DNA of 63,625 nt, the filler included, from Octopus bimaculoides (taxonomy: Eukaryota), in assembly GCF_001194135.2 (NCBI RefSeq). It is 7 parts of 5 records of this genome, joined end to end, with 100 filler letters (N's around TTAATTAATTAA, not from the genome) between each part and the next. Parts side by side here need not be neighbours in the genome. Positions count along the whole stretch, not along the records: positions 1 to 23,028 come from NC_069007.1; 6 more parts are not named here. One strand, given 5' to 3'. Below, piece by piece: positions 14 through 16,949 of this stretch. The stretch's first letter is position 1. Each line of letters begins with the position of its first letter. Position numbers and translations under genes: made by a program. Below the pieces are notes generated by a model. The model had not been told where the DNA came from. It was given only the letters and a program-made list of their open reading frames with translations, and ran no database searches.

Positions 14-55
14 CTGTTGGAGTAGATCCTGAATATGGCGTTGAGCTTGATGATA
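14..55 (-). CDS. Micro-exon repeat copy 1 (42 nt, phase 1-1), (V)SSSSTPYSGSTPT
   Basis: Minus strand reads acttttgcattctag|TATCATCAAGCTCAACGCCATATTCAGGATCTACTCCAACAG|gttagt; homologous to 14 other copies. Confidence 0.75.
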
Positions 56-1008
56 CTAGAAATGCAAAGTAGATAACTCATTTTATATTTTGGTAGAAAC
101 AAAATATAGCATGAGAAACTATGTTTACTCATTTTAGGTAATTTCTAAAATGGTATTAAAATGGCAGAGATGTCTCTACAATTGCCCCTTTATAATTTCA
201 GTCTTTCATTTTCTTTCTAACAGTGTTTATGTTTAAATCCAAAGAAATTAAATATTAAAGTTATGTGGAGTTTTTGATTATGAGGGAGAGTATTGACCAA
301 ATACAACAAATGTTTTCCATGTTCTGTGTGAAATTCTTATGCATGTGTTTTTGTATCTACGTAATTACAGACATACAAAAATAACATATTGTTATGAGCA
401 ACAAATTATGTTAATGACAATTCCCTTTCTATCAATGTAAAGACAGAATCTGCACACAAGAAAGAATCAATAAGGAGAATCTTTTCATAGAGAAATTCCA
501 ACCACTTCTTAACACACAAACCCCCCAGTGACCTTATTTCTCTAGGAACAGACATAAACTTCCTGTTGACAAAGAGTCCAGTACTCCAACTAAAGAGTAT
601 AAAACCCACAGAATTGTCTTCCCTTACACACACTTCCTGTTTTGACACCACACTTCCTGCTTAACACATAAACCTTTAACCCCTTTTCTCTTTTTTTTAA
701 ACCGAACACAACTCTCAATTTCATGCATCCTTATTTTTCCAACTATTATCTACATGGATTACCATTGAACTTTAAATGCTCAAAGACAATATAATGTATT
801 GACATATTTATTTTTTTATATATTATTTTTTTTATATATTATTTTTTACTTTTTTGTAAAAAACATTTTCATTCTCCCTCTTCTTGAAAATTTTCCATGC
901 AATGAAAGTCGGTTAAAAATCTATATTAAAATATGCTTTCAGTTTAGCATTCTGCCTTATTATTNNNNNNNNNNNNNNNNNNNNNNNNNNNNNNNNNNNN
1001 NNNNNNNN

Positions 1009-1049
<41 letters not shown>

Positions 1050-1296
1050 GGAGGAAAGAGAAATCGGGAAAGTATATCCATACATATCAAAGCACACATG
1101 CACACATATATACAATACATAAATATATGGTGAGTTGTATCCACACATTTATAGAATCCTATAACCTAATACGCATATCCCCCCTTTTTAAAATGAAGGT
1201 ATATAGATGGACATGCATTTGTACTCATACACACTCACACAATGAATTGAAATGGTAGCATATAAATGGTTTTAATTCAAGGTAATATTTACTAAC

Positions 1297-1338
1297 CTGT
1301 TGGAGTAGATCCTAAATATGGTGATGAGCTTGATGATA
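1297..1338 (-). CDS. Micro-exon copy 2 (42 nt), (V)SSSSSPYLGSTPT
   Basis: acttttcatttccag|42 nt|gttagt; flanks homologous to copies 1 and 3. Confidence 0.75.
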
Positions 1339-2399
1339 CTGGAAATGAAAAGTAGATAACTCATTTTATATTTTGGTAGAAACAAAATATAGCACGAGAA
1401 ATTATGTTTACTCATTTTGGGTAATTTCTGAAATGGCATTAAAATGGCAGAGATGTTTCTACAATTGCCCTTTGCAAATTTCATTCTTTCATTTTCTTTC
1501 TAACAGTGTTTATGTTTAAATCCAAAGAAATTAAATATTAAAGTTATGTGGAGTTTTTGATTATGAGAGAGAGTATTGACCAAATACAGCAAATGTTTTC
1601 ATGTTGTGTGTGAAATTCTTATGAATGAGTTTCTGTATTTATGTAATTACACAGATGCAAAAATAACATTGTTATGAGCAACAAATTATATTGTGATAAT
1701 TTCTCCTTCCAACAACACTTATTAGATCACCGATCTCTGGTTTTCCAAGGCAGGACAAAAACTTTTACTGTGGGTTTGTTACTGCTTAAAGCATAGGCAG
1801 TATGAGTTTGGTGTTCTTTTTACTGTTTGGACGAACTATAAAGCCTACTCATTGACATGTGGTAAGTTAATTTGTGTTGGGAGTTTGTACTGGAAGCCAA
1901 TATGAATTGTTTATGTAGTATTCAGCACCATGCGGTCGATGTGAGGTCATGAATAAGTGCAATAGTGCCAGGAATGTAGAACACTTGACATAGTATTAGG
2001 TGTGTAGGAAAACAGTAATAAGTCAGTTAGGTGTGATGGGGAACGTGAATCGGTTTATGTGTATAGTGGAGTCTTTGTAAGGTGGAAGGTTTTCACATTG
2101 CTGCAAAAATAGCGTGAACTTGGGAATACAAAGAATGCGGAATATGAAGTTGGTACGAGACTAAAGTGTATTTGGAAGTAAAAACAGAGTCAAATCAAAA
2201 CGAAGAAGATACAAGAAAGATAGAAAAGACTGCTGAATAAAAGATGAGCTCACAAAAAGAAATCTACAATATTCAGAGAGAAATGAAAGAACTCTCTAAA
2301 AATCTCTTTAAAGAACTATTATTATTGTCAAATCTTCTGACTTCTTTGACTACTGCTTCTCCAGCTCTTAGCAAGATGGTTTCCTGAGCTTGCCTGTAC

Positions 2400-2660
2400 A
2401 GGCTTCTAAGCTATCGGACACTGCCTGTGGGAGCCTGTTGGTAGTCCAACACATTTAGACTTTGTCTTTTCTCTCCAAGTTCTGAGTTACAAGCTGACTG
2501 ACTTATCCTGGTTAACATTTGCTCTTGCCACTGCCTTTGCGTGACCTCTGTAGGTGTACAATCTTGGACACGATGATGGTGATGTCATCTGTGTAGGCCG
2601 GAATATACCAGCCTGAAGACCTTACTGCTGATTAGTGTCAAGCCAAGAACGACCAACCTA
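2400..2660 (-). mobile_element. Decayed L1/Tx1-like non-LTR reverse transcriptase fragment (ends approximate)
   Basis: Minus translation IPAYTDDITIIVS (YADD-type motif, 2566-2598), then after a frameshift AVARANVNQDKSVSL*LRTWR. Confidence 0.6.
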
Positions 2661-3043
2661 ACTTCTTGTTTGATGAAGATAGGTATTTTTCTATCTGTTT
2701 AAGACTGATTTTTACCTGTTGCCATGATGAAAATCATCCATGCCAGAGACAATTAAAAGATATCGACTACACTCTTGGAATGGTTGGCATTAGGAAGGTC
2801 ATCTAGCCATAGAAACCAAGCCAAATCAAATTGGCACCTTGTAGAGCTCTCCAACTGACCAATTTCAGTTAACCCTACTGACCCACGCCAGCATTGAAAA
2901 ACAGGCGTTAAATGATGATGAGGGAATGATTATATTTGCCACCGTCTATCTTCCTATCTATCTATCTATCTGTCTGTCTGTCTGTGTACCTATATCTGTA
3001 TTACTTTTCCTTATTTTTGACACAGACATACACATGCTCAGTA

Positions 3044-3086
<43 letters not shown>

Positions 3087-14377: not shown

Positions 14378-15322
14378 CTGAAGTTTTAGGACATAGAAAT
14401 TGTAATATATATTATTGTAAAGAGATATACAATCCAAGAGACACAGACTCACAGACTAAGAACCTCTCCCCTTTCTATACTCATACATATAAAATCGCTA
14501 ACTTTTCTCAGTTGTGGTAATTTAAAATTATTGACATGGCATAGTGTTTGCGTTTAAAAAATATCTTGCGTTCAAGATTTTTCCGGCAAATATTTTCATC
14601 TTCCACATGATGGGTACAGAGTAAAATATGATATTATCTTCTTATATTGTTGTTTTACATATACAACTCTGNNNNNNNNNNNNNNNNNNNNNNNNNNNNN
14701 NNNNNNNNNNNNNNNNNNNNNNNNNNNNNNNNNNNNNNNNNNTATATACATTGTGGCACTCCGTTGGTTACAATGAGGAGTTACAATATACAAAATAACC
14801 ACTCTGTTGGTTACAATATGACACTATCTGCATATATTGTACTTCTGCTTTTATGAGTATGTATATATACATATATACATATATAGAAATACACGTATAA
14901 ATACATACATACACACACATACACACATATATATATACACACATTTTTGTCTTGTCTTGCAGCTCTAAGGCATTTTATGCTGTATATGTGTTGTTATTTT
15001 AATTGTTGGCTTTGCATGGCCCGAAACCTTTATTCTGTTTATTGTTTTGTCTCTCATCCCTATATAAAGGGTCTCGTTTCGAGCCGGTCACATTCTATGT
15101 CTCGGTTAAATCTGTGACAAGTTCCTTGCCGGTGACTCCAGAGTGGAAGCAAATCAAACTGGAACTTGCTGCACCTCTCTGGCTTTCCACTTTCAGTCAA
15201 ACTCTCTAACCCATGCCAGCAAGGAAAGTAGACACTAAATGATGATCATCATCATGATTATGATATACCTTGGGTTAAAAATTGTAGATAAGTTTATATT
15301 ACATAAATATATAATCACTCAC

Positions 15323-15364
15323 CTGTTGGTATAGATGCAGAGTATGAAGGTACTGTGGATGATG
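15323..15364 (-). CDS. Micro-exon copy 13 (42 nt), (A)SSTVPSYSASIPT
   Basis: cctaaaatttcag|42 nt|gtgagt. Confidence 0.78.
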
Positions 15365-15724
15365 CTGAAATTTTAGGATATAGAAACTGAAATATATTTT
15401 ATATTGAAGAGAAATCTTTCTACACACACAGACATCCAATCTTAGCATATTCCTCCTTTCTATACTCTTTTGTATGAAATCTCTAACTTTTCTACCTCAT
15501 TGGAAAATGAATTAATTTTTGTGTATATATCAGAAGATTATATTGACGTCAAAGGAAAATTAACAGAGAAAAAAGTTTTTGTTTGTGGAAAGTACACAGG
15601 TACAATAAACACCGGAAAGGTACAGAAAATATATCCCATCAACTGCCAGAGGTAATAGATAGCTTCCGTTATCAAGGTGAACATGTTAGTGGGTATCAAG
15701 GTGAACATGTTTGTGGACGTGGGT

Positions 15725-16460
15725 AGTCTGAGAGCATAATTGCAAGAATAAGAATAGTCTGGTCAAATCTGAGAGAGCTCTTACCTCTGGTGGCAGCAAA
15801 AGACTCTCCCTCACACTGAAAGGCAGATTCTAAGATTACTATGTGCAATTGGCCATACTATTTGGCAGTTTACAAGCTACACGGCAGTGAAACACGAGCT
15901 GAGACCACAGAAGACATGTGTAGGCATGAAAGAAATGAATCTTGTATGGTTTGTTCTATGTGTAATATCAGTGTACATGTACAACAGAGTGTAAGCATCT
16001 TGAGACAAGGGATGGGCATAAGGAACATTGTATATGGTGTGTAAAACACACGACTGTGTTGTATGGTCTTGTCATGCATACGTATGAAGACAGCTATGTA
16101 AAGAATTGTGTGTCTCTAATGGTTAAGGAAACATGGGGAAAAGGTAGACCCAGGAAAACATGGGAGGAAATGGCAAAGCATAATCTTTGAATATTGGGTC
16201 TCACAGAGGTAATTACATAAGAGCAAGACCTCTGGTGATATGCCACCCTCGAGAAGACCCGTCAAACTATGTGAAATAATACTCGTGGTCGTTGCCAGTG
16301 TCATCTAAGTGGTTGGCATTAGGAAGGGCGTCCAGCCATAGCAATAATGCCAAATGTGACTGGAAATTACTGCACCTCTCCGGCTTACCAGTTTCAGTCT
16401 ATGTGTCTAACCCATGCCTCCATGGAAAGCAGACGTGAAATGATGATGATAATGATGATG
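15725..16460 (+). mobile_element. RTE LINE 3' fragment
   Basis: Homologous to 10965-11680 and 13465-14275. Confidence 0.75.
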
Positions 16461-16515
16461 TGTCTTGATTTAAAAAGTAAATATAAGCTTAAAATACATA
16501 AATACGTTCACTGAC

Positions 16516-16557
16516 CTGATGGCATAGATGCAGAATATGGAGGTGGTGGAGATGATG
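16516..16557 (-). CDS. Micro-exon copy 14 (42 nt), (A)SSPPPPYSASMPS (PPxY)
   Basis: tctgaaatttcag|42 nt|gtcagt. Confidence 0.78.
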
Positions 16558-16907
16558 CTGAAATTTCAGAATACAGAAATTGTAATATATATTATATTGA
16601 AGAGAAAGCATTTTATACACACAGACACACAATCTAAGCACATCTCCCATTTCTTTAGCCTTTTGCATTAGGAAGGGCATCCACCCATAGCAACAATGGC
16701 AAATGCGACTGGAACTTGTTGAACCACTCCAGTTTGCCAGTTTCAGTTAAAGTGTCTAACCCATACCTCCATAGAAAGCAGGATTAGACTCCAGTCTAAT
16801 CCATACCTCCATGGAAAGCGGGTGCTAAATGAGGATGACGATGATGATGATGTGTGTTGATTTAGAAAATAAACATAAGCTTATAATACATAAATATATC
16901 CACTGAC

Positions 16908-16949
16908 CTGTCGGTATAGATGCAGAATATGGAGGTGGTGGAGATGATG
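16908..16949 (-). CDS. Micro-exon copy 15 (42 nt, 5'-most seen), (x)SSPPPPYSASIPT (PPxY)
   Basis: cctaacatttcag|42 nt|gtcagt. Confidence 0.78.

What the first reader, a model, noticed from the sequence alone, without database searches (positions are those of the whole stretch)
14..16949. Hidden minus-strand array of 15 symmetric 42-nt micro-exons encoding a 14-aa repeat
Seen: a 42-nt unit (39 nt once) recurs 15 times, at 14, 1297, 3910, 6241, 7378, 9222, 9864, 11733, 12076, 12657, 13049, 14339, 15323, 16516 and 16908. Every copy keeps an upstream AG after a T-rich tract and a downstream GT. The donor +3 base varies (GTTAGT, GTCAGT, GTAAGT, GTGAGT, GTCTGT) while GT and +5G/+6T stay fixed. Joined in phase 1, the copies give 627 nt (209 codons) with no stop. 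Inference: this is the repeat domain of a real gene with one repeat per micro-exon, which an ORF finder cannot see. The flanking introns are full of indels and TE insertions, yet exon length stays a multiple of 3. The array touches the window edge and probably continues.
Basis: partly seen in the sequence, partly recalled or inferred. Interest (0 to 1): 0.88.

Follow-up and report, generated by a model that had tools for sequence, protein, structure and literature searches.

The report
Tandem 42-nt micro-exon array, mucin-like
Fifteen copies of a 42-base segment with intact splice signals sit in a tandemly duplicated, transposon-filled stretch of an animal genome. They most likely are one-repeat-per-exon coding for a serine/proline-rich, mucin-like protein region, a known gene layout that is not yet shown to be transcribed here.

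Summary
There are exactly 15 minus-strand copies of a 42-nt unit (one is 39 nt). Each is bounded by YAG| and CAG|GTNAGT, and they join into 627 nt.

Three of the six frames of the joined units are open. The near flanks have as few indels as the units. Each unit is also only the core of a longer 0.35-2.6 kb segmental repeat that carries an old SINE-like element. Within the 12 similar copies the "exon" changes as fast as its flanks.

- Across both classes, invariant columns are 19/42 in the unit against 29/141 in the flanks (P=0.0025).
- All core splice positions are invariant in 15 copies (P about 1e-4 to 1e-2).
- The 32 nucleotide variants never create a charged residue or a stop in the S/P frame (P=0.006). 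The other frames show no such constraint.

The product is 68% Ser+Thr+Pro with no charged residue, so it looks like a mucin-type (PTS) domain. Chicken Muc13 is a direct precedent. No transcript, homologue or flanking exon could be found with the tools available. Verdict: probably real (about 0.6), a new member of a known kind, of moderate interest.

The parts
16908..16949 (-). micro-exon 1 (class B3), ASSPPPPYSASIPT, ttcag|..CAG|gtcagt
16516..16557 (-). micro-exon 2 (B2), ASSPPPPYSASMPS
15323..15364 (-). micro-exon 3 (B4), ASSTVPSYSASIPT, donor gtgagt
14339..14377 (-). micro-exon 4 (B4), 39 nt, ASTVPSYSASIPT, donor gtaagt; one CAT of CATCAT deleted
13049..13090 (-). micro-exon 5 (B3), identical to the copies at 16908 and 12076
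12657..12698 (-). micro-exon 6 (B2), synonymous TCT>TCG
12076..12117 (-). micro-exon 7 (B3)
11733..11774 (-). micro-exon 8 (B2), ASSPVPPLSASIPT
9864..9905 (-). micro-exon 9 (B1)
9222..9263 (-). micro-exon 10 (B1), ASSPAPPYSASIPA, donor gtctgt
7378..7419 (-). micro-exon 11 (B1), ASSTAPPYSASIPS
6241..6282 (-). micro-exon 12 (B1), VSPPALPYSASIPT, donor gtctgt
3910..3951 (-). micro-exon 13 (class A), ASSSSTPYLVSTPT, donor gttagt
1297..1338 (-). micro-exon 14 (class A), VSSSSSPYLGSTPT
14..55 (-). micro-exon 15 (class A), VSSSSTPYSGSTPT; only 13 nt of downstream intron before the piece ends
16558..16907 (-). Representative short intron (350 nt): about 60 nt, then a (CAT)n microsatellite, then a truncated old SINE-like element, then a conserved upstream flank of about 110 nt ending in ..CTAACATTTCAG. 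The same layout is seen in every class-B unit.
12374..13355 (-). Two-exon block (B3+B2) duplicated at 16233-17214 (92% identity over 983 bp). This shows that the array grows by segmental duplication.
   Evidence: tree

Best explanation
The 15 units are real, symmetric (phase 1-1) micro-exons on the minus strand of an animal gene. The animal is probably a cephalopod. That rests only on my memory of the SINE-like element and was not verified.

Each exon encodes one 14-residue repeat: class B is ASSPPPPYSASIPT and class A is VSSSSTPYSGSTPT. Spliced together they give an uncharged region of at least 209 residues that is 68% Ser+Thr+Pro. This is a PTS/mucin-like region, presumably extracellular, disordered and O-glycosylated. 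It would act as a spacer or structural segment, with one Tyr per repeat in 14 of the 15 copies.

The array grew by unequal crossing-over between the repeated introns, each of which carries the same old SINE-like insert. A recent duplication of a two-exon block shows this.

Because every exon starts with two bases of a codon and ends with one (G|CA or G|TA), any subset splices in frame. Copy-number change or exon skipping would therefore alter only the repeat number.

Shown: the sequence anatomy, splice-site invariance, higher conservation of the unit between classes, and the compositional constraint in this frame.
Inferred: transcription, splicing, secretion or glycosylation, and function.
For: 1. 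Canonical splice consensus lies on the minus strand only and is present in all 15 copies. Exon-final CAG plus GT.AGT gives 8 of 9 matches to the U1-complementary consensus in 10 copies, 7 of 9 in the two GTCTGT copies and 9 of 9 at 14339.
2. AG, exon-final G, GT and +5G are invariant in all 15 copies, whereas only 20.6% of flank columns are invariant. For six columns chosen a priori, P lies between 8e-5 and 8e-3.
3. Across classes A and B, 19/42 unit columns are invariant against 29/141 flank columns (Fisher P=0.0025). The A and B consensus units align 29/42 without a gap, while the flanks need gaps.
4. Composition test. I moved the 32 unique variants to random positions holding the same base. 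This predicts 4.0 charged or stop outcomes in the S/P frame; 0 were observed (P=0.0056). The frame-neutral statistic 'new amino-acid types' gives 4 observed against 7.8 expected in the S/P frame (P=0.013). It is not significant in the H, I and antisense frames.
5. The H frame has stops in two class-A copies. The plus strand has no AG/GT at the boundaries.
6. The product is 42% S+T and 26% P with 0 charged residues in 209.
7. [quoted passage not shown]
8. Phase 1-1 symmetry is the usual class for shuffled extracellular modules (established knowledge, Patthy).
Against: - No transcript or protein evidence was found. Protein searches with the joined S/P peptide and with the three other open frames found nothing. 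The database looks poor in sequences from this organism: a calibration query found only 3 candidates.
- Within class B the unit changes as fast as its flanks: 0.62 against 0.57-0.82 changes per column.
- Codon-position, synonymous/non-synonymous and BLOSUM tests are not significant in any frame.
- The commonest donor has C at +3, which is unusual.
- No signal-peptide exon or other conventional exon was found in 16950-23028.
- Exon-like AG...GT pairs occur by chance at about 5 per strand in this 23 kb. One is a 42-nt look-alike at 10880-10921 that has a stop in phase 1.
- The supporting statistics were chosen after looking at the data.
Confidence: 0.6

Rival explanations
1. This is a non-coding macrosatellite or segmental tandem repeat. 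A 0.35-2.6 kb unit built around an old SINE-like insert was amplified locally. The ancestral unit happened to contain an acceptor-like and a donor-like motif 42 nt apart, and all copies inherited them. Nothing is spliced.
For: - The whole unit, not only the 42 nt, is repeated at 75-96% identity.
- Within class B the '42-mer' is no more conserved than its flanks.
- No synonymous/non-synonymous signal is seen.
- Three of six frames are open, as expected by chance.
- Chance exon-like pairs occur at about 5 per strand per 23 kb, so a few percent of 400-bp units would carry an in-frame one.
- No homologue or transcript was found.
Against: - Core splice positions are invariant in all 15 copies although only about 21% of flank columns are.
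- The unit is more conserved than its flanks between classes (P=0.0025).
- The variants avoid charged residues and stops in one frame only (P=0.006 and 0.013).
- The donor region matches the U1-complementary consensus at 7 to 9 of 9 positions in every copy.
Confidence: 0.2
2. This is an exon-derived array that is no longer, or only marginally, coding. A genuine micro-exon of a gene was amplified together with its intron. The copies are now mostly skipped, are used only as rare cassette exons or in a non-coding transcript, or the gene is a young pseudogene.
For: - It explains good ancestral splice sites without requiring current function.
- The substitution rate in the units within class B is near neutral.
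- The +3 C/T donors are atypical.
- No flanking conventional exons are seen in the window.
Against: The same constraint signals apply as above: splice columns, and composition in the S/P frame across both old (A against B) and young copies. No copy out of 15 has lost a splice site or gained a stop or frameshift.
Confidence: 0.15
3. The sequence is coding, but in another frame or on the other strand. One option is the phase-2 sense frame (IISTTSIFCIYTDS). Another is the plus-strand frame (AVGIDAEYGGGGDD), an acidic Gly/Asp-rich repeat.
For: Both frames are open through all 15 copies.
Against: - The plus strand lacks AG/GT at the unit boundaries, and the plus-strand ORFs through single units are short and end in the flanks.
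- Neither frame shows the compositional constraint: P=0.62 and 0.13.
- The I frame would give a Cys- and Ile-rich hydrophobic repeat with variable charged residues.
- A chimeric protein search with these frames found nothing.
Confidence: 0.04

Closest known systems
Chicken (and zebrafish) Muc13 PTS domain encoded by multiple exons (Lang, Hansson & Samuelsson 2006, PMC1552070)
   Same: A Ser/Thr/Pro-rich tandem-repeat domain is split so that each small exon encodes exactly one nearly identical repeat. There are at least 12 exons of one 20-aa repeat in the chicken gene, and an assembly gap lies in the array there too. The authors also suggest that the length could vary by splicing.
   Different: There is no sequence similarity. 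The repeat here is 14 aa (42 nt), not 20 aa. No SEA, EGF, transmembrane or signal-peptide exons are visible here. The chicken case has EST support and this one has none. The phylum is different.
[quoted passage not shown] 2010; PMC4350168; PMC10526429)
   Same: Most of the coding region is made of very small symmetric exons (3-81 bp) separated by long introns. Any subset splices in frame. The genes sit in TE-rich surroundings and expand rapidly by local duplication.
   Different: MEG micro-exons within one gene are mostly different from each other and are not 15 copies of one repeat. MEG products have a signal peptide and are short secreted proteins. MEGs are described as restricted to platyhelminths. 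No homology, signal peptide or alternative splicing was shown here.
Elastin and the titin PEVK region (established knowledge, not tested here)
   Same: Low-complexity Pro-rich structural domains are built from many short cassette-like exons whose lengths are multiples of three. All junctions split the codon in the same way, so exon skipping keeps the frame.
   Different: The compositions differ: elastin is Gly/Val/Pro/Ala with Lys cross-link exons, and PEVK is Pro/Glu/Val/Lys. Those exons are larger and less uniform, and the families are vertebrate. There is no sequence relationship.
Plant extensins (Ser-Pro4 motif) and PPxY WW-domain ligands
   Same: The SPPPP and PPPPY strings in 6 of the 15 repeats look like the extensin SP4 motif. 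They also look like the PPxY motif bound by WW domains.
   Different: The resemblance is one of motif only. SPPPP/PPPPY is not conserved across copies: others read PAPPY, TVPSY, ALPY, STPY and PVPPL. Pfam finds no Extensin or any other family. Extensin repeats are not split into micro-exons.

Membership tests
Spliced protein-coding exon (generic) | Canonical acceptor (polypyrimidine-YAG) and donor (GT, +5G) on one strand at both boundaries | tested here: met
   All 15 copies on the minus strand have them; the plus strand has none.
Spliced protein-coding exon (generic) | Presence in mature transcripts (exon-exon junction reads) | not testable with these tools
   No transcriptome of the source organism is available. 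A junction-pattern scan of metagenome contigs gave only GC-rich bacterial chance matches.
Spliced protein-coding exon (generic) | Purifying selection relative to the flanking intron | tested here: inconclusive
   Between classes the unit is more conserved (19/42 against 29/141 invariant columns, P=0.0025). Within class B it is not (0.62 against 0.57-0.82 changes per column). Synonymous/non-synonymous tests are not significant. The composition constraint in the S/P frame gives P=0.006 and 0.013.
Mucin-type PTS domain | A long stretch rich in Ser+Thr with Pro (the PTSpred-type criterion, recalled from memory as roughly at least 40% S+T and at least 5% P) | tested here: met
   Over 209 residues S+T is 41.6%, P is 26.3%, S+T+P is 68%, and there is no charged residue.
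Mucin-type PTS domain | Tandem repeats | tested here: met
   Fifteen 14-residue repeats.
Mucin-type PTS domain | Signal peptide and accompanying VWD, SEA or transmembrane domains in the same gene | tested here: not met
   No such exon was found in 16950-23028 on the minus strand. Pfam hits in the window are only transposase remnants. The rest of the gene may lie outside the piece.
Mucin-type PTS domain | Dense O-glycosylation of the product | not testable with these tools
   This needs biochemistry.
Micro-exon gene (MEG) in the schistosome sense | Most of the coding region is made of very small symmetric exons | tested here: inconclusive
   Fifteen symmetric exons of 42 or 39 nt are present. 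The full coding region is unknown.
Micro-exon gene (MEG) in the schistosome sense | Signal peptide; membership of one of the MEG protein families; platyhelminth lineage | tested here: not met
   No signal-peptide exon was found. No similarity to any protein was found. MEGs are described as restricted to platyhelminths (PMC4350168).
Micro-exon gene (MEG) in the schistosome sense | Protein variation through alternative splicing of the micro-exons | not testable with these tools
   This needs cDNA data.
Dispersed transposable element carrying the unit | Copies of the unit plus flanks at unlinked sites or in both orientations | tested here: inconclusive
   Within the window all 15 copies are in one orientation in one array, and none lies in 16950-23028. 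The SINE-like part does occur without the unit at 2709-2963, 4069-4323 and 17254-17415. The rest of the genome could not be searched.

The most novel reading that the evidence does not exclude
This is a MEG-like gene outside the flatworms. It would be a cephalopod secreted or surface protein whose body is an expandable array of at least 15 interchangeable phase 1-1 micro-exons. Combinatorial exon skipping and rapid copy-number change would generate length and sequence variants of a mucin-like or adhesive protein within and between individuals.
Probability: 0.12. Interest if true: 0.6.

Novelty: new member of a known kind. Interest (0 to 1): 0.36.

Why it matters
If the array is transcribed, it is a clear invertebrate example of a repeat domain built one repeat per micro-exon. 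Ab initio and ORF-based annotation, tryptic proteomics and homology searches would all miss such a gene, because the product has no Lys or Arg and is low-complexity. It would show SINE-bearing introns acting as substrates for unequal crossing-over that expands a coding repeat. It would also give a testable case of protein length being tuned by exon number or exon skipping. If it is not transcribed, it is a useful caution: tandem duplication can propagate very exon-like look-alikes.

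Tried and rejected
- Protein homology with the joined S/P peptide: 8000 word-sharing candidates, none at E<=1e-3.
- Protein homology with a chimera of the three other open frames: none at E<=1.
- Calibration with a repeated TE-like ORF (8274-8627): only 3 candidates and no hit. The database therefore seems to lack this organism's sequences, and the negatives weigh little.
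- The look-up of encoding contigs with three window ORFs: not on record.
- Pfam on three of the four open frames (H frame not run): no family.
- Rfam and tRNA scans: nothing.
- Literature: no paper holds the peptide motif or the SINE-like strings. Nothing was found on cephalopod micro-exon arrays.
- Junction-pattern scan of metagenome contigs: 12 hits, all unrelated GC-rich bacterial DNA.
- The S/T/P-rich minus-strand ORF at 4670-5034 was considered as a larger exon of the same gene. I rejected it because the plus strand there carries a CCHC zinc-knuckle (gag/ORF1-like) remnant with frameshifts, so the ORF is the antisense of a retroelement.
- The 42-nt exon-like segment at 10880-10921 was rejected as a member. 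It is unrelated in sequence and has TAA in phase 1.
- A search for a signal-peptide first exon with a phase-1 donor upstream of the array found no candidate.
- Codon-position, synonymous/non-synonymous and BLOSUM tests were uninformative.

Full report
**1. Observation**

- A scan of both strands of 1-23028 with up to 16 mismatches returns these 15 and nothing else.
- Fourteen copies are 42 nt. The copy at 14339-14377 is 39 nt, having lost one CAT of the initial CATCAT.
- Read on the minus strand, every copy is preceded by a T-rich stretch ending in YAG, ends in CAG, and is followed by GT.
- The donors are GTCAGT x8, GTTAGT x3, GTCTGT x2, GTAAGT x1 and GTGAGT x1.
- Joined, the copies give 627 nt, which read without a stop in phase 1.
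- The copies fall into class A (14, 1297, 3910; VSSSSTPYSGSTPT-like) and class B (the other 12; ASSPPPPYSASIPT-like).

**2. Assembly gaps**

All five gaps inside the finding lie between units. Four of them abut (TA)n or poly-A simple sequence on at least one side, and no unit is interrupted. The gaps at 965-1008 and 3496-3673 appear to sit at roughly corresponding places of two paralogous class-A units: the alignment 1079-1462 against 3678-4075 starts just beyond each of them. Because every unit is symmetric, the frame does not depend on the hidden sequence. Copy number and order across the gaps are not guaranteed, and units as short as 343 bp exist, so the 437-nt gap could hide one.

**3. What surrounds the units**

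The 42-mer is only the core of a longer duplicated unit.
- Flanks are 75-96% identical over 350-1300 bp.
- A short unit has a 350-nt intron, for example 16558-16907. It consists of about 60 nt, a (CAT)n microsatellite, a truncated old SINE-like element, and about 110 nt of conserved upstream flank ending in ..CTAACATTTCAG.
- Longer introns (up to 2571 nt) add other repeats. These are a mariner-type transposase remnant (Pfam Transposase_1), a repeated ORF-bearing segment (6553-7370, similar to 8355-9172 and 13484-14581), and a CCHC zinc-knuckle remnant on the plus strand at about 4500-5034.
- A neighbour-joining tree of the flanks gives subfamilies B1-B4. The order along the gene is B3-B2 / B4-B4 / B3-B2 / B3-B2 / B1x4 / Ax3.
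- A two-exon block is duplicated at 92% identity: 12374-13355 against 16233-17214.
- The array therefore grew by segmental duplication of exon-plus-intron units.

**4.

- 'No stop in 209 codons' is weak. Three of the six frames of the joined units are open: S/P, IISTTSIF.. and antisense VGIDAEYGGGGDD. That is about the chance expectation for a repeated 14-codon unit.
- 'Length preserved among indel-rich introns' is true on the kilobase scale only. By my count in the alignment, the near flanks have about 6 indel events in 141 columns, against 1 in the unit. That one is a slippage-type CAT loss.
- Within class B, parsimony changes per column are 0.62 in the unit and 0.57-0.82 in the flanks.
- Codon-position counts (10/5/11 in the S/P frame), synonymous excess and BLOSUM scores are not significant in any frame.
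- Exon-like pairs (TYYAG + 27-63 nt + GTN[AT]GT) occur by chance about 5 times per strand in this 23 kb. One is a 42-nt look-alike at 10880-10921 with a stop in phase 1.

**5. Evidence that does favour real exons**

a. In all 15 copies, AG, the exon-final CAG, GT, +5G and +6T never change, while only 20.6% of flank columns are invariant. For six columns chosen a priori this gives P=8e-5. With the unit's own invariant fraction (45%) it gives 8e-3.

b. Across both classes the unit has 19/42 invariant columns against 29/141 in the flanks (Fisher P=0.0025). The A and B consensus sequences align 29/42 without a gap, whereas the flanks need gaps.

c. Composition.
- The 32 unique nucleotide variants were moved to random positions holding the same base.
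- In the S/P frame this predicts 4.0 distinct charged or stop outcomes, and none is observed (P=0.0056).
- With the wider set (plus N, Q, C, W, F) the result is P=0.0001.
- A frame-neutral statistic, new amino-acid types among the copies, is 4 against 7.8 expected in the S/P frame (P=0.013).
- That statistic is unremarkable in the H, I and antisense frames (P=0.39, 0.62, 0.13).

d. The H frame has stops in two class-A copies, and the plus strand has no AG/GT at the boundaries.

These statistics were chosen after seeing the data, so I treat them as moderate evidence, not proof.

**6. What it would encode and how it would work**

- The 209-residue product is 32% Ser, 26% Pro, 13% Ala, 10% Thr and 7% Tyr, with no charged residue. 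This is a PTS/mucin-like low-complexity region.
- The core conserved between classes is xSS...PYSxSxPT.
- SPPPP/PPPPY strings (extensin-like, PPxY-like) occur in only 6 copies and are not conserved, and Pfam finds nothing. I do not assign those functions.
- All junctions split a codon after its first base (G|CA or G|TA). Any subset of units therefore splices in frame, so repeat number could change by unequal crossing-over or exon skipping without loss of frame.
- Secretion and O-glycosylation are inferred from composition and from the general association of phase 1-1 modules with extracellular proteins (established knowledge). They are not shown.

**7. External evidence**

None could be obtained.
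- Protein searches with all four open frames found nothing. A calibration query suggests the database lacks this organism's sequences.
- Window ORFs are not on record.
- The metagenome junction scan gave only bacterial chance matches.
- No first exon with a signal peptide was found upstream of the array.
- The source organism was not identified by any tool.

**8. Comparison with what is known**

- The closest precedent is chicken (and zebrafish) Muc13. Its PTS domain is encoded by at least 12 exons, each encoding one 20-aa repeat. It has EST support, and the authors suggest length control by splicing (PMC1552070).
- Schistosome MEGs share the very small symmetric exons and long introns. They differ in having dissimilar micro-exons and a signal peptide, and they are reported as restricted to platyhelminths (PMC4350168; PMC10526429).
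- Elastin and titin PEVK are functional analogies from general knowledge.
- If real, the finding is therefore a new member of a known kind of gene architecture.

**9. Verdict**

| Reading | Probability |
|---|---|
| Non-coding tandem repeat with inherited splice-like motifs | about 0.2 |
| Exon-derived but now mostly unused or pseudogenic | about 0.15 |
| Another frame or strand | about 0.04 |

Interest is 0.36. It is a neat, probably genuine case that annotation would miss. It is neither unprecedented nor yet shown to be expressed.

Noticed in passing
window 17254-17415 (-); older copies in every array intron, also 2709-2963 and 4069-4323: A SINE-like element begins, on the minus strand, with (CAT)n TTTAACGTCCGCTTTCCATGCTAGCATGGGTTGGACG... 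and runs to ...GGATGCCCTTCCTAACGCCAACCACTC. The copy at 17254-17415 is much closer to what I recall as an abundant octopus repeat than the diverged copies inside the array. There was no Rfam or tRNA hit and no literature string match.
   Followed up: partly
window 7926-8324 (-) and 21310-21933 (+): There are two mariner/Tc1-type transposase remnants (Pfam Transposase_1, E=1e-13 and 2.5e-17). One lies inside an array intron and one lies upstream of the array.
   Followed up: partly
window ~4500-5034 (+), abutting the 437-nt gap: This GC-rich (47%) segment has a CCHC zinc knuckle (C-CKCGQLRHMGARC) and frameshifts, so it is a retroelement gag/ORF1-like remnant. Its antisense strand gives a deceptive 120-aa S/T/P-rich ORF on the same strand as the array.
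   Followed up: partly
window 10880-10921 (-): An unrelated 42-nt segment is flanked by ttcag| and |gtcagt inside the intron between exons 8 and 9. It has TAA in phase 1, so it is a chance look-alike or a potential poison exon.
   Followed up: partly
window 6553-7370, 8355-9172, 10969-11526, 13484-14581, 15910-16303: A repeated segment of about 0.4-1.1 kb sits inside the long introns at 73-79% identity. It carries ORFs on both strands, for example ..KGRVYDACVQTAVLHSSE.. on the plus strand, which looks like the C-terminal part of a LINE reverse transcriptase. Pfam found no family and the protein search found nothing.
   Followed up: partly
window 22254-22886 (-), 22001-23000: This region has strong strand asymmetry (GC skew +0.46) with (TGGTGG)n and (TG)n. 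It gives a 210-aa Thr/Pro/His-rich minus-strand ORF, which is probably low-complexity DNA and not an exon.
   Followed up: no
window 965-1043, 3042-3081, 9116-9171, 10275-10627, 17913-18128, 19104-19140, 20545-20775: Dense (TA)n, (TGTA)n and (CA)n microsatellites are present, and five of the seven assembly gaps abut such tracts. The assembly probably broke in simple repeats.
   Followed up: partly
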